IMG/VR virus record: IMGVR_UViG_3300046003_007892
Coordinates: 124,001-188,000 of that record
DNA: 64,000 nucleotides
Reading direction: 5' to 3' (one strand)
Shown here: positions 3,510 to 49,640 of the stretch, piece by piece
Numbering within the stretch: position 1 is the stretch's first letter
Layout: every line of letters starts with the position of its first letter
Program-made: the position numbers and the translations under genes
The notes under the pieces: model-generated
What the model saw: the letters and a program-made list of their open reading frames with translations, nothing else
Databases searched by the model: none
Told to the model about the DNA's origin: nothing

Positions 3510-3516
3510 TATTTAG
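3510..3516 (-). promoter_or_regulatory. Late-type promoter CTAAATA upstream of clpX
   Basis: Motif recurs 13 times upstream of genes; here followed by an SD-containing leader. Confidence 0.65.
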
Positions 3517-3546
3517 GAAAGCCGAGGCGGCTTCAATAATTACGAC

Positions 3547-4752
3547 CTAGGACGGGTCATTATCCCGTGGTTGAAAGTTTTCAGCCGTAAGCCACCCAGT
3601 ATCGACCATTTCTTGCTCAGATTTGTCGCTTTCGTGAACGGCGGCGACAATTTCTTCCAGGAGGTGAGGATTGTTTTCCAGGATGGTAAGCACCTGTTCC
3701 TTGGCCGATACTGAACTTTCTTCGGCAACTGTGGACTGAATTTCCGGCTCAGCTTCGGGTGTGTCCGCTACCGTATCGTCTTGACTCGCCAGAGCTTCTT
3801 TGGCAGCGATTTCAAAAATCGATGGTTCCTGGAGGAATGCCGATAGGCGTTCGTTCGGTGCCGGGACGAGTGGGATGACATCCTCGTAGGAAACCGGTCG
3901 TTCATCTTCCGGGATGAAGTCGTCCTCTGGGGAATCTTCTTCGATGACATCGGTCTCGCTGAGGTCTTCCTCGACTGGTTCCTGAACGGCTTCCACGACC
4001 ACCGGCTTCGGTTGGCGAGAACGTGACCATTCTCCAAGCGTGATCGTGCCTGAGATCATCAGGACGATAGCCAGAGGGTCGAAGGCGAACATCAGTGTTC
4101 CGATGACGGCTTGAACGGCTGCCGTGGGGTCTTTGAAGCCCATGGTGGTCAGGGGGCCCAGCTTGGCGGTGGCGGCGTTGGCCTGACTCCGCAAAGGTGC
4201 CATCTCGACGTTCTTGGCGGTGATCTGCGCGTTCAGGGCGGCGATCTCTCTGGAGATGCGATCACGGTCCCGGCGTTGTTGGCTCATGAACGTCGTTGCG
4301 CCCCTGGCCGAGCCGCCCGCAAGATAGGTGTCCACGGTCTTGTTGATGTTGGCTTGCTGGCGTTCCAGTTCCGTCCGTTGGGCGAGCAACTGGTCAAGTT
4401 GAGCCTGATGACTTTCAACCTGCATCGTGATCTCGGCCGCAGGCGCCTTCTGGTCGAGATGGGCCTTCATCAGATAGCCGTAGATGCCCAAGCTCGTGAT
4501 CAGCATCAGGGCGATGACCGCTGCGCAGAGGTAGAAGCGGTGGAACTTGCTGACGAGGGGGTTCTTCCAGTTGGAATGGACCCAACCCGCAGCGACGAGC
4601 TTGCTGACTTCGAGGACGACGCCCATGATGGCGACCGGCAAGAATGCAGCCGAGAACAAAGCAGCCAGTCCGACCACGCTGAAATAAGCCGCAACAGCGG
4701 AGATCGCCACGGCACAAAACAGGGTCAAGGACCCGACGAGAAGTTTTTGCAA
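3547..4752 (-). CDS. Membrane protein with coiled coil and acidic tail
   Basis: N-terminal hydrophobic helices, Q/E-rich heptads, further TM segment, D/E-rich C-terminus; start uncertain. Confidence 0.75.
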   Translation of the reverse strand: MQKLLVGSLTLFCAVAISAVAAYFSVVGLAALFSAAFLPVAIMGVVLEVSKLVAAGWVHSNWKNPLVSKFHRFYLCAAVIALMLITSLGIYGYLMKAHLDQKAPAAEITMQVESHQAQLDQLLAQRTELERQQANINKTVDTYLAGGSARGATTFMSQQRRDRDRISREIAALNAQITAKNVEMAPLRSQANAATAKLGPLTTMGFKDPTAAVQAVIGTLMFAFDPLAIVLMISGTITLGEWSRSRQPKPVVVEAVQEPVEEDLSETDVIEEDSPEDDFIPEDERPVSYEDVIPLVPAPNERLSAFLQEPSIFEIAAKEALASQDDTVADTPEAEPEIQSTVAEESSVSAKEQVLTILENNPHLLEEIVAAVHESDKSEQEMVDTGWLTAENFQPRDNDPS

Positions 4753-4756
4753 AGGT

Positions 4757-5143
4757 TTAGCCTTCTTTCACCAAAGTCAGGCCATGCTCACGATCAAGGA
4801 ACTTGTATTCAACCTTGACTGTCTCAAACACGCCTAGAGCTTCGATCACCATATCTGTGTCTAGCTCAGAGCAGGTGTAAAGATCAAATTGAAGAACAGC
4901 CGGAACGCATTCGTCCCATGAGTGCATGCCGATGTGGCTAGTCTCAATGATGGCGTCGGCGGTCAGTCCACGATTACCTTCTACTGGACAATAACGTGCA
5001 CGCGGCGCGGCGAGTTCTTTCATCCCGATATCCTTGATCAGCTTGGACATCCAAGCACAAACAGCGGCAATGTCCTTCTCCAGCGGAGGATTCATGACCT
5101 CGGCGCGGACAATGAGGTGTTGGTGGCGGTTATCGGGTGTCAT
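4757..5143 (-). CDS. speD: Pyruvoyl-dependent AdoMet decarboxylase-like proenzyme
   Basis: IIETSHIGMHSWDE...FDLYTC matches the ESH.S.HTWPE...DxFTC pattern. Confidence 0.85.
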   Translation of the reverse strand: MTPDNRHQHLIVRAEVMNPPLEKDIAAVCAWMSKLIKDIGMKELAAPRARYCPVEGNRGLTADAIIETSHIGMHSWDECVPAVLQFDLYTCSELDTDMVIEALGVFETVKVEYKFLDREHGLTLVKEG

Positions 5144-5212
5144 TATTCGTGAACGACCTCTCTAAAAGTAGTGGAACCGGAAATACTATCTAGGTTGTAG
5201 TATAGGTGCGAA

Positions 5213-5743
5213 TTAAATCGCGGTGACTGTGATGGCCGCTTCGGCTGCGGCAAGGTTTGCCGCCAGAGAACCCACGTCGATCTTCTCGATGCGAGTGCCA
5301 AAGCGGGCAACGTTGGTCGTGAGGCCAGCGTCATTCTCGGAGGCGGTTGCGGTGGGGTCGAAATAGTCTCCAGACTCGATACGGTTCGTCAGCAGAGAGC
5401 GGGCGATCACGCGCTTGAGCGCAGCGGCGCCGACCAGACCTTCGGCAGCCAAGCAATCCTCGCCGTGTTCGCTCACCAGAGTGAACGCGAACGTGGTGGC
5501 GTCCGTGTTGGCGTCAGCGTCCGACGTCACCGAGGTGACGTAGAGGTTGCCCATCATGCCCAGCATCCCGATCATCATTTCGTAGCGGGAGTTGCCGCGT
5601 TCCTTGGCGAGAGATGCGGCAACATCGGCAGCGAAATCGTCTTCGGCCATGTATTGTTCGATTTTTTTATTGTCGATGAAACCGTCGCCATCGGTTGCCC
5701 CGACCAGCGTTGTGATTTCAACTTCATAGGTTTTGCTCGCCAT
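5213..5743 (-). CDS. Hypothetical protein, probably virion structural
   Basis: Ala/Thr-rich ORF with GGAG SD, downstream of ATAAATA. Confidence 0.7.
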   Translation of the reverse strand: MASKTYEVEITTLVGATDGDGFIDNKKIEQYMAEDDFAADVAASLAKERGNSRYEMMIGMLGMMGNLYVTSVTSDADANTDATTFAFTLVSEHGEDCLAAEGLVGAAALKRVIARSLLTNRIESGDYFDPTATASENDAGLTTNVARFGTRIEKIDVGSLAANLAAAEAAITVTAI

Positions 5744-5768
5744 GGGGTATCTCCAGAATCCAGTCAGT

Positions 5769-5775
5769 TATTTAT
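5769..5775 (-). promoter_or_regulatory. Late-type promoter ATAAATA
   Basis: Recurrent motif. Confidence 0.6.
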
Positions 5776-5862
5776 CGTAATGCACTGTCCACGATTGTAT
5801 TTTGACTGTCGGGACTCTGCTTTGATAAATGGTTTGCAGACACCCTGTGTAAACGAGACCTA

Positions 5863-7731: not shown

Positions 7732-7734
7732 GAC

Positions 7735-11253: not shown

Positions 11254-11312
11254 GGCGATCTCCTCAAACTTGACTCGTTTTCGCATGCCGCGAAAATCTT
11301 GTCAAGTAAATA

Positions 11313-12235: not shown

Positions 12236-12402
12236 TCTGGATGCTGCCCCATTTCCTGTCAAGTAAATATTTCACTTTTCTGAAAAAGTATTTTGACCTC
12301 AAGGGGTTAACTATGGCTAAATAGGTTCACACGGGAATTCACCCGTGGTGGGCAGGAAGACCTCTCAAGACGGAGAGGCAGCTAAGACCCACAAGGAGAA
12401 AT

Positions 12403-13954: not shown

Positions 13955-13960
13955 TAAATA

Positions 13961-24909: not shown

Positions 24910-26570
24910 ACGGAGTCCACGATCTTCTTCAGAACGCCGCCGTGGCGGTCGTAGGCGCACGCGCCGATAGCACTCGTTCGGTCCAGCTTCTGGACGGCCA
25001 TCTTCATCTGCGCTGGCGTGAATTCCTTCTGCGGCATGTAGCCGACCATCTGCATCCGGTTGTAGGGCTCAAGCTTGTCCAGGAAATTTAGGAAGATCGG
25101 CATCGGGATGCGGTTGGCCTCATAGGAGGCATAATACTTTCTCGCGAACATTTCGACGTCGTGATCGAGTGTCGCTTGCAGGATAAACGGCGGGACGTCG
25201 CCGGGACCACCAGTCCAGGATTCAAGAACGTGGGGGTCGCGGGCAATCAGGGTTTCCATGTTGGCTTGGCTCATCCGCAGGCCCTGGTAATATTTTCTGA
25301 ACTTCTCGTGGTTCTGGAGAATGAACTGCTGAACTCCAGCGGACAGCTTGCGGCCGACTGCGCGGCGAGGCGTCTCTGAGATGATCTCGATCACCTGCTT
25401 GTCTCCAAACGGAGCGATGCTCATGATGAGATTGTCAGTCTCCCCCATGGCGCACAACGGGTCAGCCATGATGCGGTCCTGCACGGACTTCGGAAGATCG
25501 CTCCACTGTATACCATTGTTGCCCAGACCGGACAGCACGATAGACGACGTGTAGAGGAATGAGATGATCTCATCGTCGGACAGTTTGCCTTGCCGCATCT
25601 GGTTGATGAAAATCTGCGGCTTGGCCGACCAGATTGCACGGTTGGACTTCGGCTCGTTGCCTTCGTAGCGGTTATTGACCGTCTGGAGGAGCTTGATGCC
25701 CTTCATGGACATGAAGACAGCCTGCGAGGGCTCGTTCTCGTGGATGATGCCCTGGCCCTCGTGCTTGGACCAGTCGTAGTCCAGGACGCCGTCGTAGCCC
25801 ATCTTGCGAAGAATCTTGTTCCAGTCCAGAGACGGGTTGAGGCTTTCTTCGTCGTCGGCCCAAGAATTCTGGGTCTCGTATTCGTCGAGGTCGCGATGAT
25901 ATTGCTCTACCGCCCCCGCGTGGGTCTCCAGTGCCTCTTCCCATTCGTCTTCGCTGTCGAAGTCCTCGTATTCTGGCTCGTCGGGCCATTCCGGGCGGGT
26001 CAGGTCGGGGTCCACGAGACGCATCTTCGTTTTTTCGAGTGCGGCCTTGTAGAGAACATTCCACAGGGCGCCGCCCTCGGTATCTACGGGGAGATCGTCA
26101 TCCGGGACTTCGTTGAACTCCGAAGATGCGTAGCGGACATCCGATACGCTCACCTTGGCGAGGTCGAGAACATTCAGCGACGGGCTGATCTCGAATACCT
26201 GGATGTATGGAGCCGTGGAAGCGAACTCGACGCCGCCTTTGCCCTTATGGAGCACGTAGTCGATAGGGTAGGCGTAGATGCCCAGCGGTGTCCGATAGCT
26301 GGACTGGGGGTTGATGCCCAGTTTGGCTCCACGGGTATTGTGGGTCTTACCGGATGCGCCCGAGACGCCGCCGTCGCGGAAGTTCTTGCCTTCGATCTTG
26401 CCGCCGTAACTGCCAGCCTTGCCCATATGGGTCAGGTTGCCGACGTCTTCCGTGTAGGAGACGAACACGTCCTTTCGGCCCTCGTAGGGACGAAGCTGAT
26501 CTTCAATCGAACGCTTGAAGTTCTGGTCGGGATTCCGTCGCTGTTCGAGGAGGATTTCGTGGAAACGCAT
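24876..26570 (-). CDS. Putative internal head protein with ART-like motifs and acidic insert
   Basis: MRFHEILLE N-terminus; PLGIYAYP, GYDGVLDY, GIIHENEPSQAVF; CTAAATA 4 nt upstream of ATG. Confidence 0.75.
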   Translation of the reverse strand: MRFHEILLEQRRNPDQNFKRSIEDQLRPYEGRKDVFVSYTEDVGNLTHMGKAGSYGGKIEGKNFRDGGVSGASGKTHNTRGAKLGINPQSSYRTPLGIYAYPIDYVLHKGKGGVEFASTAPYIQVFEISPSLNVLDLAKVSVSDVRYASSEFNEVPDDDLPVDTEGGALWNVLYKAALEKTKMRLVDPDLTRPEWPDEPEYEDFDSEDEWEEALETHAGAVEQYHRDLDEYETQNSWADDEESLNPSLDWNKILRKMGYDGVLDYDWSKHEGQGIIHENEPSQAVFMSMKGIKLLQTVNNRYEGNEPKSNRAIWSAKPQIFINQMRQGKLSDDEIISFLYTSSIVLSGLGNNGIQWSDLPKSVQDRIMADPLCAMGETDNLIMSIAPFGDKQVIEIISETPRRAVGRKLSAGVQQFILQNHEKFRKYYQGLRMSQANMETLIARDPHVLESWTGGPGDVPPFILQATLDHDVEMFARKYYASYEANRIPMPIFLNFLDKLEPYNRMQMVGYMPQKEFTPAQMKMAVQKLDRTSAIGACAYDRHGGVLKKIVDSVYPPKPSPKTK

Positions 26571-26574
26571 CCAC

Positions 26575-26581
26575 TATTTAG
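26575..26581 (-). promoter_or_regulatory. Late promoter, leaderless configuration
   Basis: CTAAATA-GTGG-ATG; the TAA is also the stop of 26578..26994. Confidence 0.7.
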
Positions 26582-29993: not shown

Positions 29994-30803
29994 TTAGCGG
30001 CACCCCATGGCGCGTCTATACTGTGCGAAGTTTGCTTGCACCCATTGGATTACTACGCTCATGTCGTCGTTCACGAACAGAGGCCGCAATCCCCTGTTCT
30101 GGTTTTTGTTTATCACCTTCCAGGTCCCGCCATCGTTGGCGATGAAGACGATATCGCGGGGGTCAACGTCTGCTCCCCAGAACACGATCTGTTCTTCCTG
30201 ATCGCCGTGGTGGTCACACTTGACGCCTGAGTTCATGAACATGACGGCCTCTCGCCCATACTTGCTGCCGCTGTCGGCATTGCGGTAGTTGGCGTCGTAG
30301 GCGAAATTGTAGCCGCCGTGCTTTTTTGCCTCGTCTGAGAACCACGTAGTCAGCCCGAGCTTGTCCATCTCGTCCATTCCGTACTTGAAACCATAGAGGG
30401 AGATTTCGCGGGCGTTGTCCGAAAAATGGATGAGCCACGTCGTGCGAGGAATCAGGCGATCTTTCCCGAGTGTCATGTGGGCGGTGGTCGGGGCATCGGC
30501 CGGGTCGTGGTGCAAGATCGTACCGATGATATCCTGGGCGCATTCTTTCTGGATGTGCTCGGGGAGCTTGTAGAAAAAATCGGCATCATACGTGATGGAG
30601 TTGGCGAGATCGTTCCAGGTGACCTCTTCGCCCGCCGCCTCATTGGTCTCGTCGGGATAGTTGTCCACGAGCCATGACGCGATATGACTCCAGTGCTGGT
30701 AGGGGTCGAAATCTCCACCCTTCATGTACTGGAGGAAATTCGTGTTGTCGGGAGAATACTTCTCCATCACGGACTCGGCGACGATTTCGAAGTAGGTTTT
30801 CAT
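29994..30803 (-). CDS. Putative internal head protein, ART-like C-domain
   Basis: MKTYFEIVAE resembles the T4 capsid-targeting sequence; WLIHFS...NFAY...DQEEQIVFW; ATAAATA 5 nt upstream. Confidence 0.75.
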   Translation of the reverse strand: MKTYFEIVAESVMEKYSPDNTNFLQYMKGGDFDPYQHWSHIASWLVDNYPDETNEAAGEEVTWNDLANSITYDADFFYKLPEHIQKECAQDIIGTILHHDPADAPTTAHMTLGKDRLIPRTTWLIHFSDNAREISLYGFKYGMDEMDKLGLTTWFSDEAKKHGGYNFAYDANYRNADSGSKYGREAVMFMNSGVKCDHHGDQEEQIVFWGADVDPRDIVFIANDGGTWKVINKNQNRGLRPLFVNDDMSVVIQWVQANFAQYRRAMGCR

Positions 30804-30808
30804 CCACC

Positions 30809-30815
30809 TATTTAT
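30809..30815 (-). promoter_or_regulatory. Late promoter, leaderless configuration
   Basis: ATAAATA-GGTGG-ATG. Confidence 0.7.
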
Positions 30816-31261: not shown

Positions 31262-31530
31262 TGCTAACCGCGAGTGATCGTGCCCTCCAACTCGCCTTGC
31301 TGGTTCTCGTCGTCCCATACGCGATTTTGTGTTGGGTGGTGGCTCCATGCTTCCTGCTTTTTGCCGCGATAATAACGCTCGGCGCCGCCTTGCTCGACCG
31401 GTGCGGCTTCGAAGAGTTCTCCGGGATGTTCATCGTCACGCTGTTTGTCGTCACATCGCCGTTCCGCTTCGTGTTCGACCGAATCTACGCAGCCGTGTTG
31501 GGTCGCGAACACGAGTGGAAGTTTCACTAA
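31261..31530 (+). CDS. Hypothetical membrane protein
   Basis: Two or three hydrophobic helices; TGATG coupling. Confidence 0.65.
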   Translation: MLTASDRALQLALLVLVVPYAILCWVVAPCFLLFAAIITLGAALLDRCGFEEFSGMFIVTLFVVTSPFRFVFDRIYAAVLGREHEWKFH

Positions 31531-31533
31531 ATA
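31527..31533 (+). promoter_or_regulatory. Late promoter, leaderless configuration
   Basis: CTAAATA-TGGA-ATG; the TAA is the upstream stop. Confidence 0.7.
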
Positions 31534-31537
31534 TGGA

Positions 31538-32122
31538 ATGCGTCTGACCGAACTCTCTATCCCGCACGACCGCGAAGAACTCTCGCTGGAACTCATGGTC
31601 GCAGGCTACAGTCCGTTGGGTTCCGGCGACTTCGCCGATGTCTACCACAAGCCCGGCGCCGCCTACGTCCTAAAGGTTTTCGAGCCTCGCGACGAAGCCT
31701 ATCGGGCATTCCTGACCCTGGCCCGCTCCCATCAGGACAACCCGCATTTCCCGAAGATCATCGGGAAGCTCGTAAATATCAAAAACAAATGGTTCGCTGT
31801 TCGGCTCGAAAAGCTGGAGCGGTATCGCTACGACAGCACTCTGATCTACCGCTACATTCGCTGGCGGGATGAGCGAGGCAAGCATGACCCGCAGGGTATG
31901 TTCGCGATGGAACTCGAAGACGCGTTCGAGTTCATGGAGGAATACCCGAAACTCCAAGAAGCATGCGATCTCATCATCGACAATCTCCTCACGCAGGGCG
32001 GCCAATCCCTGGCCGGTCATGTGCCGGATTTCCGTCAGGACATCCGCAACGACAACATCATGATGCGGGGAAATACCATCGTGATCGTTGACCCTATCGT
32101 GCCCAACAAAGAGATGAAGTAG
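31538..32122 (+). CDS. Protein kinase-like fold enzyme, putative head cargo
   Basis: LGSGDFADVY, VLKV, DIRNDNIM (DxxxxN), IVIVDP; MRLTE N-terminus. Confidence 0.8.
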   Translation: MRLTELSIPHDREELSLELMVAGYSPLGSGDFADVYHKPGAAYVLKVFEPRDEAYRAFLTLARSHQDNPHFPKIIGKLVNIKNKWFAVRLEKLERYRYDSTLIYRYIRWRDERGKHDPQGMFAMELEDAFEFMEEYPKLQEACDLIIDNLLTQGGQSLAGHVPDFRQDIRNDNIMMRGNTIVIVDPIVPNKEMK

Positions 32123-32707: not shown

Positions 32708-32797
32708 AATAGCGGTCCTTTTGCTGTTGAAGGGTTATTTAGGCATTTTGGTTGCCCAAATGTCAAAATCAGCGTGGCGCGCATTGTCGCAGCCAGT

Positions 32798-35698: not shown

Positions 35699-35705
35699 CT
35701 AAATA
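35699..35705 (+). promoter_or_regulatory. Late promoter, leaderless configuration
   Basis: CTAAATA-AGCC-GTG. Confidence 0.65.
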
Positions 35706-35709
35706 AGCC

Positions 35710-36480
35710 GTGCGCATAGCGGTATGTATATCTGGGCAGTTGCGAAACTGGGACCAATGCGGAGCATGGTGGGAACCTCTGTTCTCCCATCTCGCCCCCA
35801 CGTATGACGTCTTCGTCCACACCTGGGATTACCGCACGGAGCCGGGCAGCACGGTCTCGGCCCCGGTCTCCGATATCGAACTCGCCGCCTTTCGGGATTG
35901 CTTTGACCCAGTCGCCATGCAGGTTAGCCCTGCGGCCGATTATGCGTGGCTGGACGAACGAGCAGCCAGGATTCCCAACACCTGCCACCTCGTCACACCC
36001 GGACGACCATCGACCCAGCACGCCAGCCAGTTCGATTCGATGCGGCGAGCCTTCCATCTCAAACGAGAGCACGAGATCGCCGAGGGGTTCCTCTACGACA
36101 TCGTCATACGCGCCCGCACAGACATTCGCATAACCAAGCCCCAGCCCCTTGCGGCTCCAGGACGCGACACCGTCATGGGTGAACTGTTCCGTCGTCTTGC
36201 GTGGCGGCACACCCATTTCTCCGACCGTTTCTTCATCTCCGATTCGGTGACGGCGGACAAGATCGGCAACGTCTTCGCTGCCCTCCCCATGATTCGCTCC
36301 GGCGTTTTCTTTGAACCCGACAAGGACATCACGCCCGAGACCGTTCTGCATTTCTACCTTCGAATGCTGGGACTCAAAATTCAATCTATCGACGTCGCCA
36401 CCCGCCTCGTTCGATCATCTCAATACGCCGCCGCCCAGTGCGAGCTTGGGCGCGGACTGGGAGCCCATGAAACGATCTAG
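35710..36480 (+). CDS. Putative glycosyltransferase-like protein
   Basis: RIAVCISGQLR...DVFVHTWD...YDIVIRARTD...SDRFF. Confidence 0.7.
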   Translation: MRIAVCISGQLRNWDQCGAWWEPLFSHLAPTYDVFVHTWDYRTEPGSTVSAPVSDIELAAFRDCFDPVAMQVSPAADYAWLDERAARIPNTCHLVTPGRPSTQHASQFDSMRRAFHLKREHEIAEGFLYDIVIRARTDIRITKPQPLAAPGRDTVMGELFRRLAWRHTHFSDRFFISDSVTADKIGNVFAALPMIRSGVFFEPDKDITPETVLHFYLRMLGLKIQSIDVATRLVRSSQYAAAQCELGRGLGAHETI

Positions 36481-38766: not shown

Positions 38767-39223
38767 GCCCCAGCATCTCATCTTCGACGTCGATGGCGTA
38801 TTCACTGACGGGAAGTTCTACTACACCGCTGACGGCAAAGTCATGAAGGCGTTCTGCTGCCAGGATAGCGATGGTCTCAGAGACCTCATGGGCGAGTTCA
38901 ACATCCATCTCATCACCGCCGACAAGAACGGCTTCGAAATCTCTCAGGTGCGGGCCAAGGATATGGGATTCCCCATCCATCTGGTCCCCAACGCAGACCG
39001 TGCCGCGCACGTTGCCCACTACGTCAAGTTCGGTGGTGCGATCTTCATGGGTGACTCGATGACGGACATCCCGGCCCTCAGGGAGGCCACCTACGCCATC
39101 GTCCCCAAACAGTCCCGCATCGAAGTCCGCGATGAAGCCGACTACGTGACCGCCTACGCTGGCGGAGAGGGCGCCGTCTTGGACGCCTGCCTGCATCTGA
39201 AAGAGAAGTTCCGAGCCCGCTAA
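38753..39223 (+). CDS. KdsC/YrbI-family HAD sugar-phosphate phosphatase
   Basis: IFDVDGVFTDG, KAF...D..G, FMGDSMTD. Confidence 0.88.
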   Translation: MISRKPQHLIFDVDGVFTDGKFYYTADGKVMKAFCCQDSDGLRDLMGEFNIHLITADKNGFEISQVRAKDMGFPIHLVPNADRAAHVAHYVKFGGAIFMGDSMTDIPALREATYAIVPKQSRIEVRDEADYVTAYAGGEGAVLDACLHLKEKFRAR

Positions 39224-39226
39224 ATA
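39220..39226 (+). promoter_or_regulatory. Late promoter, leaderless configuration
   Basis: CTAAATA-TGGC-ATG; the TAA is the upstream stop. Confidence 0.7.
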
Positions 39227-39230
39227 TGGC

Positions 39231-39740
39231 ATGCGATATGCCGAACTGAGCGAGAAGTGGGTTGGGGCCGTCAAGACCAAATGGTCCAACGATCACATCG
39301 ACCTCTACATGGACCCGTCGCGGGCTGAGTTCATGAAACTCATGAAGGAATGGGGCACCGCCGCCCGCGCACTCGTGTCCACGCAGGGCAACCTTCTTTT
39401 CTGGCATATGGACCAAGCCCTCCACAGCGAGGCCGCAATGTCGATTGAAGGTCACGCCTGGGTCCCCGCCCATCTTGTCCTGTATCCGCCCGGCAACGAA
39501 TGTTCGATCATCATCAACGAGTTCGAGAACTTCATGTGGGATGACGACTTCGATGACGCCAACGGCGGTGGCTATAAACCCCTGCTGACCCGCGTCGTCT
39601 CGACCCTTCAGGCCAACGAGCATCTCCAGCGCATCTACGGCACGGTCGAACTCTGGGGTCTCGCCGAAGACCGTGGTCTCGACAATCCCTACATCGCCAT
39701 CACGCCGGAATGGCTGGCTGCCAACGTGGTGAAGAAATGA
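39231..39740 (+). CDS. Putative internal head protein (domain shared with 41296..42525)
   Basis: MRYAELSE; LYMDPS...ARAL...FW...ALH. Confidence 0.7.
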   Translation: MRYAELSEKWVGAVKTKWSNDHIDLYMDPSRAEFMKLMKEWGTAARALVSTQGNLLFWHMDQALHSEAAMSIEGHAWVPAHLVLYPPGNECSIIINEFENFMWDDDFDDANGGGYKPLLTRVVSTLQANEHLQRIYGTVELWGLAEDRGLDNPYIAITPEWLAANVVKK

Positions 39741-40294: not shown

Positions 40295-40596
40295 TCGCGA
40301 GGCGGCACATAGAAGCCGTAGCGAATGCGCTCCCGGCGAATTTGCTCGTCGGCCATCGCCTGCTCGTCGTTGAGGTCTTTGTAGATGCCCCAGCGAAGAA
40401 CCCGCCACATTCCACTACCGAGTTTCTCGACCATCGCCTGAGCTTCCTCCTGCGAGCAGAAGCCAGCATAGACGGAGTTGGTCCCGGCACCAACGACGTA
40501 GATGCCGTTGCGGTCCTGCCACTCGGTCCAGGTCCCCTTCACGATCTTGTCGTTCGGGGTCATGCTCTGTTCGACGATGTCTATGATTTCGCGCAT
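40291..40596 (-). CDS. Hypothetical protein with head-cargo-like N-terminus
   Basis: MREIIDIVE. Confidence 0.65.
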   Translation of the reverse strand: MREIIDIVEQSMTPNDKIVKGTWTEWQDRNGIYVVGAGTNSVYAGFCSQEEAQAMVEKLGSGMWRVLRWGIYKDLNDEQAMADEQIRRERIRYGFYVPPRD

Positions 40597-43064: not shown

Positions 43065-43513
43065 CGGTTTTCTCCGATGCGGTCCCATAGGCCATCGAGT
43101 TTGCCACCGATGACCGTGCGGTAGAGGAACTGGTAGCCGTCGTCGCGGAGTTTATCGAAAGCCTGCACGTCTTCGTGCCGGTTATCGCAGATGAAATCTC
43201 CCCGGTCGGTGGTCACGCACAGGACGGCGTGACCCTCATTTTCTTCAGTCTTGCAGACAGTAAAGAGAAGCGCGGATGCGGGGAACCCCGCCTTGAGGAG
43301 CATGTCGAGTTTGTAGAGGGTGATGCCGTCACAATCCTCGATCTTGTCGCTAGCAACATCGCGCGGGAAATCCCAGCGTTCGATGACGCCCCAGGTCTCC
43401 TCGTCCGAGGTCCACACGACCTCATTGCCCAGACGATTGACGCGTCGGAGTTCAGCCCATGCCTTGGTGGTCAGGACGAGACGATTATTTCCATCAACGG
43501 TGTATTTCAGCAT
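43061..43513 (-). CDS. Transglutaminase-like cysteine peptidase (BTLCP/LapG-like)
   Basis: RVN...W...D...W...EDCDGITLYK...GHAVLCV.T..GD.ICDN. Confidence 0.85.
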   Translation of the reverse strand: MLKYTVDGNNRLVLTTKAWAELRRVNRLGNEVVWTSDEETWGVIERWDFPRDVASDKIEDCDGITLYKLDMLLKAGFPASALLFTVCKTEENEGHAVLCVTTDRGDFICDNRHEDVQAFDKLRDDGYQFLYRTVIGGKLDGLWDRIGENR

Positions 43514-43695
43514 TGTTCGAACTCCGGGTTGCGCTCGCAGAACTCTGTCGCCGCTGGGGGAGTTGTGACCCTGCCCTGCGTTTCCATGTGCTCAGCACAG
43601 GGCAGGCCGGGCTCTGGAGTGCAGTGATCGTATTTGGGTTGTTCAGTACAGCCCAAGACAAACAGCGTGGCGAGGATAGCAAAAGCAGCTTTCAT
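43507..43695 (-). CDS. Small lipoprotein
   Basis: MKAAFAILATLFVLGC lipobox; leaderless after CTAAATA. Confidence 0.75.
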   Translation of the reverse strand: MKAAFAILATLFVLGCTEQPKYDHCTPEPGLPCAEHMETQGRVTTPPAATEFCERNPEFEQC

Positions 43696-43700
43696 GCTGC

Positions 43701-43741
43701 TATTTAGACAAAGAAAATCCAGATAAGGTGGAGGATAAATA
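43701..43741. promoter_or_regulatory. Back-to-back late promoters
   Basis: TAAATA on minus strand at 43701-06 and on plus strand at 43736-41. Confidence 0.7.
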
Positions 43742-43769: not shown

Positions 43770-44267
43770 ATGTCTAAGAAACCCGCATGGCTCGAAGTAG
43801 CCGAACGTTACATCGGCACGAAAGAATATCCCGGCGCCGGAAACAACCCCGTCATCCTCCAGTGGGCCAGCAAGACCGCCCGCTTCCTCGGTATTTCCTA
43901 CAAACAGGACAGCGTGCCGTGGTGTGGCCTCTTCACTGCATTCTGCATCAACGAAGTAGGTCTGGTGCCGGTCAAGGTCGCGGTTCGCGCGTCCGAGTGG
44001 GCCAAGTTCGGCGTCGCCGTTCGGGAACCCGTTCTCGGAGCTATCGCGGTCTTCACCCGCGAGGGTGGTGGTCACGTCGGCTTCGTTGTCGGCCATGACG
44101 CCGACGCCCTGCACGTTCTCGGTGGCAACCAATCTGACGCCGTCAACGTCCAGCGTATCGCGAAGTCGCGCTGCTCTGCGATGCGCTACCCGGCCGGTCT
44201 CCCGACCCCGCGTCCGCTCGCACATTCGACCCTGGCTGATTCCCGTCTGAGCACCAACGAAGCCTAA
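43770..44267 (+). CDS. TIGR02594-family NlpC/P60-like peptidoglycan peptidase (endolysin candidate)
   Basis: WLEVA...GTKEYPG..NNP.I, PWCG.F, GGGHVGF, VLGGNQ. Confidence 0.9.
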   Translation: MSKKPAWLEVAERYIGTKEYPGAGNNPVILQWASKTARFLGISYKQDSVPWCGLFTAFCINEVGLVPVKVAVRASEWAKFGVAVREPVLGAIAVFTREGGGHVGFVVGHDADALHVLGGNQSDAVNVQRIAKSRCSAMRYPAGLPTPRPLAHSTLADSRLSTNEA

Positions 44268-44641
44268 TGCGCGATCTGATCAAGCTGGCCGAAGGCCTGC
44301 GGCTCCTGACCCTCTACCACGGCACCTGCGCGCACAACGCGAAGATGATCTGTAAGGATGGTTGGCAGCCGCATTCCGGGGCTCCCTACGGGGCCTCACA
44401 CGGCGGCCAGTCTGATTATCTCTACATGAGTACCGACGAGGAAGACGCTCTTTGGTTTGCCGAAGAGCAGGGCTGCACGACGGTCATTCAGGTCATCAAC
44501 GTCCCCATCGATTACTTGATAGTGGACCCCGAAGACGGTTGCTCTGAGACAGTCGAGGAAGAAATCTCGGGACCGTATCCGGGCAAGGTTGCTTTGACTC
44601 GCGCCCTTGGTCCCGAACACTTCATTCTTTCTCAGGTCTAA
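44267..44641 (+). CDS. ART-like putative head protein
   Basis: MRDLIKLAE; LYHGT, LYMSTD...A..FA. Confidence 0.65.
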   Translation: MRDLIKLAEGLRLLTLYHGTCAHNAKMICKDGWQPHSGAPYGASHGGQSDYLYMSTDEEDALWFAEEQGCTTVIQVINVPIDYLIVDPEDGCSETVEEEISGPYPGKVALTRALGPEHFILSQV

Positions 44642-44644
44642 ATA
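44638..44644 (+). promoter_or_regulatory. Late promoter, leaderless configuration
   Basis: CTAAATA-GCTG-ATG; the TAA is the upstream stop. Confidence 0.7.
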
Positions 44645-44648
44645 GCTG

Positions 44649-45983
44649 ATGATCAGAGAACTCGACTACTGGTATGGCGCGCAGACGAAGCGTTTCCTCG
44701 AACAAATCGTCCGCGCCTTCTCGGGCTATCAATACATGACCGGCTGGCGCAATGGCGACGAGCCCCAGTTGAAGATGGTCCCATGCCGGGTCGATTCTCG
44801 TGATCGCCTCGTCGGTCACATCATGCGCAACAACTCGGAGAACACCCTCCTGGCGGCGCCGATGATCACGGTGTCCCACACCGGCCTGACGATGCGCCGT
44901 GAGGACGTTCAGAACCTGACCCACATCGACACGCTCCAAATTCACGAGCGCGAGGTTGATGAGAACGGCGAGTACACGGGCAGATCGGGGAACCGCTACA
45001 CCGTGGAACGCCTGATGCCCCGGCCATTCAACATGCTGGTCAGCGTCGATATCTGGACCTCAAACCTGGACCAGAAGCATCAACTCCTGGAACAAATCCT
45101 GACCGTGATTGTCCCCACGTTCGAAATTCAGAACTCCGACAATCCGCTGGATTGGACAGCCAAGACGCACGTCGAGGTCGAGGACATCAACTGGTCCTCT
45201 CGTCAAATCCCCATCGGAACTGGCGGAGAGAACGATCTCGAAATCGCGACCATCACCCTGCGGGTTCCGATCTGGCTCTCTCCTCCGGCCAAGATCACCC
45301 AACAGCGTCGCATCGAGAAAATCATCACGAACATTCACGACGACACCATTGAGGGTGACACCGGCTCACCACACGTCGTGACGCCGGGCAACCACCGCAT
45401 CAGTGTCTCGGGCGACACCATTACTCTGCTGGGCTCCAAGGGAGCACTGAAGAATGACGCGAACGAATTCCACTCGTGGGCTGATTTGATCAACGACTAT
45501 TCGAAAGACCTTCGCCCGACCCTGAGCCAACTTCGTCTGAGCAAGAACCTCGTTCTCGAAGACGAAGACGAGATCGTGGGAACGCTTCAGTACGACAACG
45601 CGCACCCGAACAAACTCTTCTGGCAGATCGACCCCGACACCCTACCGTCCAACACCCTCTCGCCGGTTCTGGCGATCATCGACCCACTGCGGAACTGGCC
45701 CGATAACGGCCTGCCGGTTAGTGCCTCCGGTCAACGCTATCTGGTGGTCTCTGCGGTCGGTGCTTCCACTCAAGCTTGGGGCAACCTCGTCGCGTCTGAA
45801 AATGACATCATCCAATACAACAATGGTCAATGGTCGGTCGTGTTCGACGCCAGCGTGGCCATTACTGAGCGGCACTATATGGTAAACCTGAACAGAAGCA
45901 AGCAGTTGAAATGGACGGGAGAGAACTGGGTCGTGGCCATTGACGGTGACTATGCTCCCGGATATTGGCGTCTCGTGCTCTGA
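44649..45983 (+). CDS. Tail completion/sheath stabiliser (T4 gp15-like) with C-terminal extension
   Basis: YWYGAQTKRF...F, VP, MPRPFNM...DIWTSN.DQK.QLLEQIL, WT...EL. Confidence 0.7.
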   Translation: MIRELDYWYGAQTKRFLEQIVRAFSGYQYMTGWRNGDEPQLKMVPCRVDSRDRLVGHIMRNNSENTLLAAPMITVSHTGLTMRREDVQNLTHIDTLQIHEREVDENGEYTGRSGNRYTVERLMPRPFNMLVSVDIWTSNLDQKHQLLEQILTVIVPTFEIQNSDNPLDWTAKTHVEVEDINWSSRQIPIGTGGENDLEIATITLRVPIWLSPPAKITQQRRIEKIITNIHDDTIEGDTGSPHVVTPGNHRISVSGDTITLLGSKGALKNDANEFHSWADLINDYSKDLRPTLSQLRLSKNLVLEDEDEIVGTLQYDNAHPNKLFWQIDPDTLPSNTLSPVLAIIDPLRNWPDNGLPVSASGQRYLVVSAVGASTQAWGNLVASENDIIQYNNGQWSVVFDASVAITERHYMVNLNRSKQLKWTGENWVVAIDGDYAPGYWRLVL

Positions 45984-47452: not shown

Positions 47453-47892
47453 TCGAGTATCCGGCCTCATTCTATTGTGCGGTCGGAGAAGGTCATATCC
47501 GGGACCGCAGGCAAGACGGCGAATGGCGGTGGTTCACCATCGACGACCAACACGGTCTGGCCATTCCCCTGATTGCTCTGCGGGCCAACGAAGTCGATGC
47601 GAGCGGCGATCTCTCATACACGGGTCGCTTCGCCAATCTGGTTGAGGATGATCTCGGTCTCGCCGTTGTGGTCATGATCGATTTCTCCCTCAAGCACCAT
47701 CAGGCGTTTCTGAACGACATTTTTCGTTTCGTCGTTGAATCCGGTTCCCCTTGGACGATGCGGGTGGCCCGCCAACTTGAGGTGGCCCCCGTGCAGATGA
47801 TCATCGGGACGGCATGCTTCCGCACCTATGCGGCCATGTTCGAGCAGTGGCCGAAGGACGTCCTCGACGCAACCGACCCCGCCTACCGATAG
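47449..47892 (+). CDS. Hypothetical protein
   Basis: ATGA coupling. Confidence 0.65.
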   Translation: MIEYPASFYCAVGEGHIRDRRQDGEWRWFTIDDQHGLAIPLIALRANEVDASGDLSYTGRFANLVEDDLGLAVVVMIDFSLKHHQAFLNDIFRFVVESGSPWTMRVARQLEVAPVQMIIGTACFRTYAAMFEQWPKDVLDATDPAYR

Positions 47893-47899
47893 GGCCATC

Positions 47900-48808
47900 A
47901 TGTATTCGAAAATCAGAGACCTCCATAACGTAGCCGACGCGGTGTCTGATCGCACGGCACCGGACTCCGTCGTCAACCAAGAGATCGATTCGGCTTGCCG
48001 GGACGTGCCCGGATATCGGTCTCTCGACTATGCGGGTTCCTCGGAAAATGCTCTGGTTCTTGTTTCCCTCCTGGCCGGGACCCGCGTTCGTGTCCTGATC
48101 GATTCGGACCCAGACCGCAGCCCCGAATGGCGATGCCTCATCCGTCTTTCAGGAGAGGATGGGACCTCGGCCCAAGGGTTGACCCATCACAGCATGGCGC
48201 GCGCTATTCTGCGTGCTCTGTTCGCCCACATAGCGAACCAGTGCAGTCATACCTGGACACCAGCCATGGCCAGCTATGGCATGTATTGTGGCACCTGTGG
48301 GGTGTTCTCGACGGCGGTGTTCGACGGCGATGACCCGGTCGAGAAGGTCGTGAACCAAAAATCCATCATCGACGTCATTGATACCCCCGAGGCCCCCAAG
48401 GGAAGTCAACGATTTCGGGGTGAACTCGGTGAGCTTTATCATTGGGCTTCTCAGCACATCGACCGCACACCCAAGCTCCCGTGCGCCGTCACCGATATGA
48501 CCCCGAGGGAGTTCAAGATTTTCGAGGTCACCGCCTACGCGTGCGGGTTCGGCCTGTTCATCCGCGATCTTCTTCACGCCCGCCTTGTGCGCGAGCAGTC
48601 TGAATCCGTGACCGACGCTCTCAATGCGGCGGCAGAGGCTATCGGGACCTGGGTGTGCACCTACGCCTCTGACATGTGCTCAGAGGAAGACGTTGTCGAA
48701 GCCCAGAATCGCATCGCCGAAGGCGGCGGCACGCTCGCCTATACGGCCGAGGTGGGGCGCCGCATCCAGAACGCCATTGATGACATCAAAGGGCGGAAGG
48801 ATGTCTGA
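47900..48808 (+). CDS. Hypothetical protein
   Basis: 302-aa ORF. Confidence 0.65.
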   Translation: MYSKIRDLHNVADAVSDRTAPDSVVNQEIDSACRDVPGYRSLDYAGSSENALVLVSLLAGTRVRVLIDSDPDRSPEWRCLIRLSGEDGTSAQGLTHHSMARAILRALFAHIANQCSHTWTPAMASYGMYCGTCGVFSTAVFDGDDPVEKVVNQKSIIDVIDTPEAPKGSQRFRGELGELYHWASQHIDRTPKLPCAVTDMTPREFKIFEVTAYACGFGLFIRDLLHARLVREQSESVTDALNAAAEAIGTWVCTYASDMCSEEDVVEAQNRIAEGGGTLAYTAEVGRRIQNAIDDIKGRKDV

Positions 48809-49562
48809 CGCCGAACTCCTCCTTGACCCCAAACACAGAGGCGAAGTCTCGCGGGTGCTCCGCAGTGCCTTGGAGATCAAGGACCGTGACCGCCACATCA
48901 TGGCGGTCTACCAGAAAGCCTTGGAGGCTATCGAGCACCATGGCACCAACACACAGTCGGCCTTCGTTGGTCACGTCCGTGGCGTCGTCCGCTACGCCTT
49001 GGGCGAAGTCCAGCGTCTCAAGAAAGAAAACACCACCGCCGACCATGAGATCGCCGTCAATCCCAAGATCGCCGCCATCGTCGAAGAGTGCTGGCGGTAT
49101 TGGGAACAGGTCAAGGGGAACTGCGGCGACGACATCAACATCGAAAACCAGGAGTTCAACGTCGGGCTCATCTCGTCTTGGGTTCGGGCCACGCATTCTC
49201 TGTCGAAGGCTCCCGGCGAATACATGATCTACGAGAAAGACCTGGACGCTGACTTGATCTTCGACGAAGCCGCTGTCGCCTATCTCCTCGCCCAGCAAGG
49301 GACCACGACATTCAAGACCGATGCGGCCACTTACGTGGACATGTCGGGAATCACGACAGCCATGACCGAGATGGTCAAAATCCTTCTGTCGATCTCCCGC
49401 GTCCGCATCATTCTCATGAACCGTACCATGAAGGAGTTCGCCCGCGAGGCCGAGCACACCGAGCACAAACTCCGGCAGGAGAACATGCTCCTCAGGGCAG
49501 AGCGGGACCAACTCAAGAAGCGGCTCGACAAATATGAGCCGGACATTAAGTCAACGATGTAG
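48801..49562 (+). CDS. Hypothetical coiled-coil protein
   Basis: GGAAGG SD; C-terminal heptads. Confidence 0.7.
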   Translation: MSDAELLLDPKHRGEVSRVLRSALEIKDRDRHIMAVYQKALEAIEHHGTNTQSAFVGHVRGVVRYALGEVQRLKKENTTADHEIAVNPKIAAIVEECWRYWEQVKGNCGDDINIENQEFNVGLISSWVRATHSLSKAPGEYMIYEKDLDADLIFDEAAVAYLLAQQGTTTFKTDAATYVDMSGITTAMTEMVKILLSISRVRIILMNRTMKEFAREAEHTEHKLRQENMLLRAERDQLKKRLDKYEPDIKSTM

Positions 49563-49640
49563 CCCTAAATAATCTCAAGCCGGTTGACGAGCGACCCGCG
49601 CGCAGTTACCATTTTTTGGTAGCCCGAGATTGGTTTGAAA

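What the first reader, a model, noticed from the sequence alone, without database searches (positions are those of the whole stretch)
3510..49571. TAAATA late promoters placed to make leaderless mRNAs, often reusing the upstream stop codon
Seen: (C/A)TAAATA at 3510, 5769, 12318, 26575, 30809, 31528, 32736, 35700, 39221, 43701, 43736, 44639 and 49566. In seven cases (26575, 30809, 31528, 35700, 39221, 43701, 44639) the start codon lies 4-5 nt downstream with no room for an SD. In four cases the TAA is the previous gene's stop. Established: T4 late promoters (TATAAATA) initiate about 5-6 nt downstream. Inference: much of the late programme is leaderless, giving a rationale for phage IF3/bS21.
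Basis: partly seen in the sequence, partly recalled or inferred. Interest (0 to 1): 0.7.

Follow-up and report, generated by a model that had tools for sequence, protein, structure and literature searches.

The report
Start-codon-hugging late promoters in a megaphage
In this uncultured lake megaphage, a T4-style late promoter motif (TAAATA) sits 4-5 bases before the start codon of about 45 genes, so many late messages probably have no leader; this is well supported by sequence but has no RNA evidence yet.

Summary

**Counts.** TAAATA occurs 17 times in the window against about 3 expected. It occurs 90 times in the 240-kb record, which is a roughly 45%-complete lake-metagenome phage. About 44 of the 90 end 4-5 nt before an ATG that opens a real ORF, where about 1 is expected. 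These genes have no SD and start almost always with ATG. Nineteen head divergent gene pairs, with as little as 22 nt between the two start codons.

**Other copies.** Fifteen sit 13-56 nt upstream of genes, mostly with GGAG-like SDs. Ten are the reverse complement of sigma70-like early promoters on the other strand. Almost none lie inside genes.

**Relatives.** Closer uncultured relatives (56-69% gp15 identity, contigs up to 576 kb) keep the same bimodal spacing. One of them encodes a gp55-family late sigma. T4, Atu_ph07, Phosso and PA5oct do not show it.

**Reading.** Best reading: gp55-type late promoters fused to start codons, giving leaderless or near-leaderless late mRNAs. No RNA data exist, and N4 needs a start site 1 nt closer than in T4.

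**IF3 and bS21.** Both genes are real, but the proposed rationale runs against published work, since IF3 inhibits leaderless initiation.

**New.** About half of these genes share a T4 capsid-targeting-like N-terminus.

The parts
26568..26580 (-). TAAATA-N4-ATG. Start of a 564-aa gene (24876-26570) with N-terminus MRFHEILLEQ. The motif's TAA is the stop of the upstream gene 26578-26949.
   Evidence: an orthologue in relative L234 keeps N4 and the N-terminal motif
30801..30814 (-). TAAATA-N5-ATG. Start of a 269-aa gene (29994-30803) with N-terminus MKTYFEIVAES, which resembles the T4 capsid-targeting sequence.
31528..31540 (+). TAAATA-N4-ATG. Start of a 194-aa gene (31538-32122).
35700..35712 (+). 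TAAATA-N4-GTG. Possible start of a 256-aa gene (35710-36480). It is one of only two GTG cases; the coding model prefers a TTG 10 codons downstream.
39221..39233 (+). TAAATA-N4-ATG. Start of a 169-aa gene (39231-39740). The motif's TAA is the stop of 38753-39223.
43693..43706 (-). TAAATA-N5-ATG. Start of a 62-aa lipoprotein-like gene (43507-43695, lipobox LGC). It heads a minus-strand operon that runs into CTS-like genes 41296-42525 and 40604-41299.
   Evidence: the same arrangement is kept in relative L231 with different spacer letters
43736..43741 (+). Leadered TAAATA: a 28-nt leader with GGAG, then the ATG at 43770 of an endolysin-like gene (43770-44267). It is divergent from the 43701 promoter.
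   Evidence: Phosso, Atu_ph07 and L231 have the same leadered TAAATA in front of their endolysin
44639..44651 (+). TAAATA-N4-ATG. Start of the T4 gp15-like tail-sheath stabiliser/completion gene (44649-45983). The motif's TAA is the stop of CTS-like gene 44267-44641.
   Evidence: PF16724; start methionine shared with homologues; N4 kept in L231, N5 in L233
3510..3515 (-). Leadered TAAATA: a 30-nt leader with AAGGA, in front of the ClpX - IF3 - bS21 - ClpS operon.
1352..2178 (-). Phage IF3 (1654-2178, with both IF3_N and IF3_C domains) and bS21 (1352-1579).
5769..5774 (-). Leadered TAAATA: a 25-nt leader with GGAG, in front of a 176-aa gene (5213-5743).
32736..32741 (-). Leadered TAAATA: a 28-nt leader with AAAGGA and a TTG start, in front of a 181-aa gene with a signal-peptide-like N-terminus (32162-32707).
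12318..12323 (+). TAAATA followed by a hairpin. The next gene starts 79 nt downstream. Role unassigned.
49566..49571 (+). TAAATA 227 nt upstream of the seryl-tRNA synthetase gene. Role unassigned.
11300..11312 (-). Not a late promoter. The plus-strand TAAATA here is the reverse complement of TATTTA-CTTGACA, the AT-rich stretch and -35 box of a sigma70-like early-type promoter reading the minus strand. A second copy lies at 12257-12269.

Best explanation
TAAATA is the core of a T4-type late promoter, recognised by a gp55-family sigma, with a -10-like element only and no -35 box. In this megaphage lineage it has been placed so that transcription starts at, or within a base of, the A of the start codon. 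About 45 genes in the 240-kb fragment would then give leaderless or near-leaderless mRNAs. These would be translated without an SD, presumably by 70S/IF2-type initiation on a 5'-terminal AUG. The host is probably an alphaproteobacterium. The only experimental precedent for frequent leaderless mRNAs in that class cited here is Caulobacter crescentus. The same promoter is also used in the ordinary way, with a 20-35 nt leader carrying a GGAG-type SD, for about 15 other genes, including the endolysin and the ClpX-IF3-bS21-ClpS operon. Early genes use TTGACA-N15/16-TAnnnT promoters with SD-bearing leaders, so the mode of translation initiation would differ between early and many late messages. About half of the start-adjacent genes also begin with M-[KR]-x-x-hydrophobic-[DE]-hydrophobic-x-E, which resembles the T4 capsid-targeting sequence. 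The promoter, the ATG and this targeting peptide together form a compact 5' cassette on otherwise unrelated genes. Shown: the motif statistics, the spacing, the absence of SD, the gene context and the conservation in relatives. Inferred: promoter activity, late timing, the exact start site, the leaderless translation mode and capsid targeting.
For: - **Enrichment.** 17 copies against 2.9 expected in the window. Of 90 in the genome, only about 5 lie inside predicted genes, although about 81% of the genome is coding.
- **Spacing to the first ATG opening an ORF of at least 50 aa.** N4 31 and N5 7, against about 0.5 expected per bin. A second broad mode lies at N13-38, with almost nothing at N8-12.
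- **SD.** 0 of 46 start-adjacent genes have a 4-nt SD core, against about 33% of other genes and about 10% at random positions. The leadered copies mostly carry GGAG-like runs.
- **Start codon at N4/5.** 43 ATG and 2 GTG; other genes have 206 ATG, 59 GTG and 24 TTG. This matches the AUG bias of true leaderless mRNAs in C. crescentus (PMC8459731).
- **Structure.** The first 42 nt are less structured than in other genes (mean MFE -4.7 against -6.6, p = 4e-4).
- **Gene order.** 19 of 46 head divergent pairs. Three pairs have both start codons only 22, 26 and 35 nt apart, each with its own TAAATA. A promoter must therefore lie in that short stretch or inside the neighbouring gene.
- **Upstream sequence.** No conservation upstream of the motif except the absence of T at -1, as expected for a -35-less late promoter. 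The T4-like phage Aeh1 uses CTAAATA.
- **Start-site hint.** In non-start-adjacent copies, A is enriched at the 6th nt after the motif (17 of 34), the T4 start-site position.
- **Downstream genes.** They are of late type: gp15-like tail protein, endolysin, lipoprotein, virion structural hits, ADP-ribosyltransferases and homing endonucleases.
- **Relatives.** At 56-69% gp15 identity, relatives show the same bimodal spacing: 40 motifs, 9 at N4, 8 at N5, 11 at N20-34. The motif stays at the gp15 and lipoprotein starts while the spacer letters differ. The 576-kb contig among them encodes a gp55-family sigma (phrog_12791, 5e-80).
- **An unrelated case.** L044, an unrelated GC-rich element with a gp55-family sigma, also has 6 of 12 motifs at N4/5.
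- **More distant phages.** Phosso, Atu_ph07, PA5oct and T4 have the sigma but no N4/5 peak.
Against: - No RNA evidence exists; no RNA run was listed.
- No gp55, gp45 or gp21 homologue is in this 240-kb fragment, even with an exhaustive local profile search. The record is only about 45% complete, so this is inconclusive.
- Published T4 geometry puts +1 at the 6th nt after the motif. The dominant N4 class has the A at the 5th, T at the 6th and G at the 7th. RNA polymerase could therefore start at the G and miss the AUG.
- In 27 of 46 cases the gene follows another gene on the same strand. In 12 of the 44 motifs within 7 nt of a start, the gap is only 7 nt. These genes could also be translated from read-through transcripts by restart.
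- Late timing is inferred from gene content only.
Confidence: 0.62

Rival explanations
1. TAAATA is a late promoter, but the N4 transcripts do not carry a 5'-terminal AUG. Initiation would be at the G of ATG, or at mixed positions. The genes would then be translated mainly from longer read-through transcripts, and the promoter-start overlap would be a by-product of extreme genome compaction.
For: T4 geometry places +1 at the 6th nt after the motif. A is enriched at that position in the leadered copies. N4 puts a T there, flanked by A and G. 27 of 46 genes have a same-strand upstream neighbour.
Against: 19 genes head divergent pairs with 22-77 nt of spacer, so no same-strand upstream transcript is available without a long antisense overlap. 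ATG is nearly obligatory at this spot (43 of 45), and there is no SD to serve internal initiation. The spacing is kept in relatives while the letters change.
Confidence: 0.15
2. The element is mainly a translational signal rather than a promoter. An AU-rich, unstructured, SD-independent ribosome landing or stop-restart site at a fixed distance from the AUG on polycistronic mRNAs, perhaps read by ribosomes carrying phage bS21 or IF3.
For: The fixed 4-5 nt distance lies where an SD would sit. At 12 of the 44 motifs within 7 nt of a start, TAA is the upstream stop. The phage encodes bS21 and IF3. In a 58% GC genome, TAAATA locally lowers structure.
Against: The identical motif stands 13-56 nt upstream of about 15 genes, mostly with an ordinary GGAG SD in between, which a ribosome-site reading does not explain. 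It matches the gp55-type promoter core used with leaders by the cultured relatives. Divergent pairs need promoters exactly there. Both roles could coexist.
Confidence: 0.12
3. The pattern is historical. A promoter-ATG-targeting-peptide cassette has been copied or recombined onto many genes, as proposed for T-even internal-protein loci, and its spacing is simply inherited.
For: About half the genes share the N-terminal peptide. Metagenome contigs show a further near-identical 34-nt copy of one CTS-coding segment behind its own TAAATA-N4.
Against: Spacer letters and upstream sequence are not conserved. The 46 proteins are mostly unrelated. Genes without the peptide (gp15-like, lipoprotein, endonucleases) have the same spacing. 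CTS-like genes also occur with SD leaders. History would not exclude function.
Confidence: 0.06
4. TAAATA marks an RNA-processing site, an AU-rich endonuclease cut that trims mRNAs to near-leaderless form, rather than a start site.
For: The motif is AU-rich and close to start codons. Phages of the T4 type do process mRNAs, for example with RegB.
Against: No nuclease candidate was tied to it. The motif equals the known late-promoter core. Divergent pairs would still lack promoters.
Confidence: 0.03

Closest known systems
T4 late promoters (TATAAATA, gp55/gp33/gp45-dependent) and the CTAAATA variant of phage Aeh1
   Same: The core TAAATA is the same and there is no -35 element. The sites stand before virion and lysis genes. 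Relatives of this clade encode a gp55-family sigma.
   Different: In T4, Phosso, Atu_ph07 and PA5oct the promoter is followed by a leader with an SD, and there is no N4/5 peak. Here half the copies abut the start codon. The dominant N4 spacing needs a start 1 nt closer than the published T4 position. The TA that precedes TAAATA in T4 is replaced by C, A or G.
Leaderless middle/late transcripts of Thermus phages (phiYS40; Lalka27a)
   Same: This is a phage late programme in which most transcripts begin with the A or G of the initiation codon, driven by a -10-type element without -35 (bioRxiv 10.64898/2026.04.20.719267).
   Different: The promoter consensus differs (TAGGGT in Lalka), as do the phage lineage and the host phylum. 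Those cases are mapped experimentally; this one is not.
Bacterial leaderless mRNAs, e.g. Caulobacter crescentus (385 mapped) and lambda cI from PRM
   Same: No SD, a strong AUG preference, an unstructured 5' end, and a -10 element at a short fixed distance before the start codon (PMC8459731).
   Different: Here the -10-like element is a phage-sigma motif, and the class is confined to one temporal set of phage genes.
T4 capsid-targeting sequence of internal proteins (IPII/IPIII N-terminus MKTYQEFIAE; Alt MELITELFDE)
   Same: Three genes here begin MKTY-x-[DE]-hydrophobic-hydrophobic-x-E, a pattern found only in T4 ipII/ipIII among the five genomes scanned. About 25 more have the looser M-[KR]-x-x-hydrophobic-[DE]-hydrophobic-x-E form. 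The cargo includes ADP-ribosyltransferases, as with Alt.
   Different: There are far more carriers (roughly 27-35 in half a genome). The T4 ip genes have SD leaders. The gp21-type protease is not in the fragment. No virion data exist.
Translation genes of huge phages (IF1/IF3, S21, S1, aaRS, tRNAs)
   Same: This phage carries IF3, bS21, SerRS, class I LysRS and at least 24 tRNAs, as described for huge phages (PMC7162821).
   Different: In what I read of that paper, these factors are not connected to a leaderless gene class. Here they sit behind a leadered TAAATA promoter in a genome rich in SD-less late starts.

Membership tests
T4-type (gp55-dependent) late promoter | A conserved (T/C)ATAAATA-like -10 element with no -35 element | tested here: met
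   TAAATA is invariant. Position -1 is C, A or G and never T. Positions -40 to -2 carry no information. The CTAAATA variant is known in Aeh1.
T4-type (gp55-dependent) late promoter | The phage encodes a gp55-family sigma factor | tested here: inconclusive
   It is absent from the 240-kb, roughly 45%-complete fragment. It is present in Phosso, Atu_ph07 and PA5oct. It is also present on the 576-kb contig of a 57%-identical clade member.
T4-type (gp55-dependent) late promoter | Sliding-clamp (gp45) and gp33 co-activation | tested here: inconclusive
   phrog_223 (gp45) was not found in the fragment. gp33 was not searched. Half the genome is missing.
T4-type (gp55-dependent) late promoter | Sites stand upstream of late (virion, lysis) genes | tested here: met
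   gp15-like tail protein, endolysin-like gene, lipoprotein and virion-structural hits. The head module is not in the fragment.
T4-type (gp55-dependent) late promoter | Transcription starts 6 nt after the motif, late in infection | not testable with these tools
   No RNA run was listed. There is only indirect support: A is enriched at the 6th nt in leadered copies.
Leaderless mRNA | The mRNA 5' end coincides with the first base of the start codon | not testable with these tools
   No transcriptome is available. This is inferred from the 4-5 nt promoter-start spacing only.
Leaderless mRNA | No Shine-Dalgarno sequence, and a -10 element at a fixed short distance from the start | tested here: met
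   0 of 46 have an SD core. Spacing counts are 31 at N4 and 7 at N5.
Leaderless mRNA | Strong preference for AUG and an accessible 5' end | tested here: met
   43 ATG against 2 GTG. Mean MFE of the first 42 nt is -4.7 against -6.6 in other genes. The criteria come from PMC8459731.
T4 capsid-targeting sequence (internal or ejected head proteins) | An N-terminal peptide of about 10 residues ending in hydrophobic-x-E, shared by otherwise unrelated proteins | tested here: met
   46% of start-adjacent genes carry it, against 4% of other genes. The proteins are mostly unrelated. The MKTY pattern is shared only with T4 ipII/ipIII.
T4 capsid-targeting sequence (internal or ejected head proteins) | A gp21-type prohead protease (Peptidase_S77) that cleaves after the Glu | tested here: inconclusive
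   It is not in the fragment. It is present in Phosso, Atu_ph07 and PA5oct.
T4 capsid-targeting sequence (internal or ejected head proteins) | Proteins are found processed inside virions | not testable with these tools
   The phage is uncultured and has no proteome.

The most novel reading that the evidence does not exclude
A clade of roughly 450-600-kb environmental megaphages switches translation-initiation mode during infection. Early genes use sigma70-type promoters with SD leaders. A large late regulon is transcribed by a gp55-type sigma directly from the start codon, as leaderless mRNA. Phage IF3 and bS21, themselves late, would retune the ribosome for or around this switch. The promoter-ATG-targeting-peptide unit would be a portable 45-nt cassette that both times expression and loads about 30 diverse effector proteins into the capsid for injection.
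Probability: 0.3. Interest if true: 0.85.

Novelty: new variant of a known kind. Interest (0 to 1): 0.64.

Why it matters
If the start sites are where the geometry says, this is the first T4-type late-transcription system that builds leaderless mRNAs wholesale. It would also be a natural case of a virus separating its early and late proteomes by initiation mechanism.

It gives a concrete, testable context for why huge phages carry IF3 and bS21, which is an open question since their discovery.

Practically, gene finders that expect an SD will mis-start these genes. One relative's gp15 was called 58 codons too long, from an upstream GTG.

The capsid-targeting-like cassette flags about 30 mostly unknown proteins as candidate injected effectors. 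They include ADP-ribosyltransferases, a kinase-like protein and a wall hydrolase.

Tried and rejected
- **RNA evidence.** No RNA run was listed for the gp15 junction.
- **Microdiversity.** DNA contigs from four lake runs, laid on a 5.8-kb stretch with five start-adjacent promoters, gave only about 35 SNPs and none in the motifs. That is too few to test selection.
- **Direct search for late machinery in the fragment.** The gp55 families phrog_234 and phrog_12791, a local profile built from 122 gp55 homologues run with hmmsearch --max, gp45 (phrog_223) and the gp21 protease (PF03420) all gave nothing.
- **Conservation at the gp15 start.** Eighty IMG/VR relatives at 41% identity or less, plus Phosso, Atu_ph07 and PA5oct, lack the motif there. 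Those genes are coupled to the upstream gene or carry an SD. This at first looked like evidence against function, until closer relatives were found through the large protein collection.
- **Reaching the large contigs as whole records.** It succeeded with the L044 sigma as query.
- **Single-protein scan of viral contigs for gp15.** It found nothing.
- **Annotation of the start-adjacent and promoter-proximal proteins.** Most are ORFans.
- **Repeated mobile element.** Rejected, because neither the upstream DNA nor the proteins are related.
- **Stop-codon recoding, prompted by a CUA-anticodon tRNA.** TAG ends 22% of predicted genes and the standard code gives 81% coding density, so there is no sign of recoding.
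- **Host from IF3.** The nearest Atlas clusters are viral or mixed, which is uninformative.

Full report
**What the sequence is.** The window is bases 124,001-188,000 of a single 240,363-bp IMG/VR virus record. The record is linear and CheckV rates it about 45% complete. GC is 58%. It is held in many lake-water metagenome runs.

Its gp15-like tail protein (window 44649-45983; PF16724, phrog_11196) is 41% identical to Sinorhizobium phage Phosso, 40% to Agrobacterium phage Atu_ph07 and 32% to Pseudomonas phage PA5oct. These are distant T4-superfamily jumbo phages. Closer uncultured relatives (50-69% identity) lie on contigs of up to about 610 kb, so this is half of a megaphage.

The best 80 cellular relatives of its class I LysRS are all Alphaproteobacteria. 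Together with the hosts of the cultured relatives, this points to an alphaproteobacterial host. That is an inference.

**The observation.**
- TAAATA occurs 17 times in the window, against 2.9 in shuffles.
- TAAATA-N4-ATG occurs 4 times against 0.06 expected, and N5 twice against 0.03.
- Genome-wide there are 90 copies.
- I measured the distance from the motif's end to the first ATG that opens an ORF of at least 50 aa. It is 4 nt in 31 cases and 5 nt in 7, against about 0.5 expected per bin. There is almost nothing at 8-12 nt and a second broad mode at 13-38 nt.

**How the 90 copies divide.**
- 44 lie within 7 nt of a start.
- 15 have a leader of 8-60 nt by the class bounds (13-56 nt observed).
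- 10 are not late promoters at all. They are the reverse complement of TATTTA-CTTGACA, the AT-rich stretch and -35 box of a sigma70-like promoter class on the other strand. In the window these are at 11307 and 12264.
- About 21 could not be assigned, partly because small genes were missed.
- Only about 5 lie inside predicted genes, although about 81% of the genome is coding.

**Are these real starts?** A codon-usage model that knows nothing of the motif picks the same start in 33 of 40 cases. For the gp15-like gene the first methionine aligns with that of its homologues. The shared N-terminal peptide described below begins at that methionine.

**Features expected of leaderless genes.**
- None of the 46 start-adjacent genes has a 4-nt SD core. 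About 33% of other genes do, and about 10% of random positions.
- The start codon at N4/5 is ATG 43 times and GTG twice. In other genes the counts are 206 ATG, 59 GTG and 24 TTG.
- The first 42 nt fold less stably than in other genes (mean -4.7 against -6.6 kcal/mol, p = 4e-4).

These are the three determinants measured for true leaderless mRNAs in Caulobacter crescentus. There, 96% start with AUG and each extra 5' nucleotide halves translation (PMC8459731).

**Why a promoter rather than a ribosome site.**
1. The same hexamer stands 13-56 nt upstream of about 15 genes, most with a GGAG-like run in between. Window examples are 3510 (ClpX operon), 5769, 32736 and 43736 (endolysin-like). Phosso, Atu_ph07 and PA5oct have exactly this leadered form in front of the endolysin/gp15 block.
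2. Nothing upstream of the motif is conserved except the absence of T at -1. This is as expected for -35-less T4 late promoters. The T4-like phage Aeh1 uses CTAAATA (PMC1524935).
3. Nineteen of the 46 genes head divergent pairs. In three pairs both partners are start-adjacent, and the two ATGs are only 22, 26 and 35 nt apart, each with its own TAAATA. There is no room for any other promoter or leader.
4. A clearly different promoter class exists: CTTGACAAG-N15-TAnnnT, about 30 copies, with 25-50 nt leaders carrying strong SDs. The genome therefore distinguishes two transcription programmes.
5. In copies that are not start-adjacent, A is enriched at the 6th nt after the motif (17 of 34). That is the published T4 start position.

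**Comparative evidence.** Phosso, Atu_ph07, PA5oct and T4 show no N4/5 peak. Eighty IMG/VR gp15 loci at 41% identity or less lack the motif at that gene. Closer relatives do have the architecture:
- L231 (69% identity) keeps TAAATA-N4-ATG at gp15, with different spacer letters. It keeps TAAATA-N5-ATG at the small lipoprotein and the leadered copy at the endolysin.
- L233 (57% identity, a 576-kb contig, GC 52%) has N5 at gp15.
- L232 and L234 carry several N4/5 genes, including the orthologue of the window's 564-aa gene.
- Pooled over five loci (84 kb, 40 motifs): 9 at N4, 8 at N5, 2 at N6-7, 11 at N20-34 and 10 with none.

Spacing is kept while sequence drifts, which argues for selection on the geometry.

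The 576-kb contig also encodes a gp55-family sigma: P0252, phrog_12791 at 5e-80 and the T4 gp55 family phrog_234 at 1e-18. It lies on the same ENA record as L233.

An unrelated GC-rich 33-kb element (L044) with a gp55-family sigma also has 6 of 12 motifs at N4/5. The arrangement may therefore have arisen more than once.

**Weak points.**
- There is no transcript evidence.
- The fragment itself has no gp55, gp45 or gp21 homologue. Its missing half presumably holds them, together with the head genes.
- T4 geometry puts +1 at the 6th nt after the motif. That fits N5 exactly, but in the commoner N4 class the A is 5th, T is 6th and G is 7th. Polymerase would have to start 1 nt closer, or it could start at the G and lose the AUG.
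- In 27 of 46 cases a same-strand gene lies upstream. At 12 of the 44 motifs within 7 nt of a start it ends in the motif's own TAA. Read-through plus restart could contribute there.

I put the promoter reading at about 0.85, and the full 'leaderless or near-leaderless late regulon' at about 0.62.

**IF3 and bS21.** Both are real. IF3 is at 1654-2178 and has both domains. It aligns end to end with bacterial IF3, and no domain is missing. bS21 is at 1352-1579. They lie in a ClpX-IF3-bS21-ClpS operon behind the leadered TAAATA at 3510. They are therefore probably late themselves.

The literature says IF3 inhibits leaderless initiation (PMC8459731). A link remains possible but would need an altered or antagonistic role. 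Huge phages are already known to carry IF3 and S21 (PMC7162821).

**An unexpected layer.** The 46 start-adjacent proteins are mostly unrelated to each other. Yet 46% begin M-[KR]-x-x-hydrophobic-[DE]-hydrophobic-x-E, against 4% of other genes. Three begin MKTY-x-[DE]-hydrophobic-hydrophobic-x-E. This is the pattern of the T4 internal-protein capsid-targeting sequence, MKTYQEFIAE, which I read from the T4 record. Among the five genomes scanned, it occurs only in T4 ipII/ipIII and in this phage.

The cargo includes two ART-PolyVal ADP-ribosyltransferases, a cell-wall hydrolase, a kinase-like protein and virion-structural hits. The same peptide also occurs on genes with SD leaders, for example window 40294-40596, 40604-41299, 41296-42525 and 44267-44641. 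It is therefore a protein signal and not an RNA feature of leaderless starts. Relatives show it too. The cultured relatives encode the gp21-type protease that would cleave it. Capsid targeting is an inference.

**Comparison and novelty.** T4-type late promoters are known. So are leaderless late transcripts in Thermus phages. In the relatives and papers I examined I found no example of the two combined on this scale in a megaphage clade, with the compact promoter-ATG-targeting-peptide cassette. I rate it a new variant of a known kind. It is interesting mainly because it makes the role of phage-encoded initiation factors directly testable.

Noticed in passing
window 29994-30803(-), 24876-26570(-), 40294-40596(-), 40604-41299(-), 41296-42525(-), 44267-44641(+); about 25 more in G000: Otherwise unrelated proteins share an N-terminus of the form M-[KR]-x-x-hydrophobic-[DE]-hydrophobic-x-E (e.g. 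MKTYFEIVAES, MREIIDIVEQS). It resembles the T4 internal-protein capsid-targeting sequence. This suggests a very large set of packaged or ejected proteins.
   Followed up: partly
window 11300-11312(-), 12257-12269(-), 20513(+), 24181(+), 33448(+), 62410(+), 63106(+); about 30 in G000: There is a second promoter class, (TATTTA)CTTGACAAG-N15-TAnnnT, with 25-50 nt leaders and strong GGAG SDs. It is presumably read early by host sigma70. Ten of the genome's TAAATA hits are just its reverse complement.
   Followed up: partly
window 446-3479(-): A ClpX-like ATPase, IF3, bS21 and a ClpS-like adaptor lie in one operon behind a leadered TAAATA. This is an unusual pairing of proteolysis-targeting and translation-initiation genes.
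   Followed up: partly
window 15655-15730(+): This is a tRNA with anticodon CUA (an amber suppressor; ARAGORN labels it Pyl). TAG still ends 22% of predicted genes and the standard code gives normal coding density, so no recoding is evident.
   Followed up: partly
window 49799-51151(+), 51752-53548(+); tRNA arrays at G000 26.6-27.3 kb, 40.7-43.3 kb, 64.7 kb, 82.9-83.3 kb: The phage carries a seryl-tRNA synthetase, a class I lysyl-tRNA synthetase and at least 24 tRNA genes. All of the 80 best cellular relatives listed for the LysRS are alphaproteobacterial.
   Followed up: partly
L044 (IMG/VR record labelled provirus, 33 kb, GC 62%): This element is unrelated to the phage but has a gp55-family sigma, and 6 of its 12 TAAATA copies lie 4-5 nt before ATGs, including its lysozyme gene. 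It may be an independent case of the same design.
   Followed up: partly
L006:11729-11762 (G000 86,729-86,762): Contigs in two lake runs join a different upstream sequence, ending in its own TAAATA-GAGG, exactly at this gene's ATG, and diverge again 34 nt later. The targeting-peptide coding segment therefore exists in near-identical copies elsewhere, which may be a recombination substrate.
   Followed up: no
window 13955-13960(+): This TAAATA directly follows a TAA stop and precedes a GC-rich hairpin with a T run. It looks like a terminator context and an incidental match.
   Followed up: no
L233:10001-11533: The public gene call for a relative's gp15 starts at an upstream GTG (510 aa). The TAAATA-N5-ATG start gives 452 aa, in line with homologues. 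SD-based gene finders mis-start this gene class.
   Followed up: no
window 55895-58989(+): A tellurite-resistance (TerC-like or TerD-type) gene and membrane-protein genes lie downstream of the tRNA synthetases.
   Followed up: no
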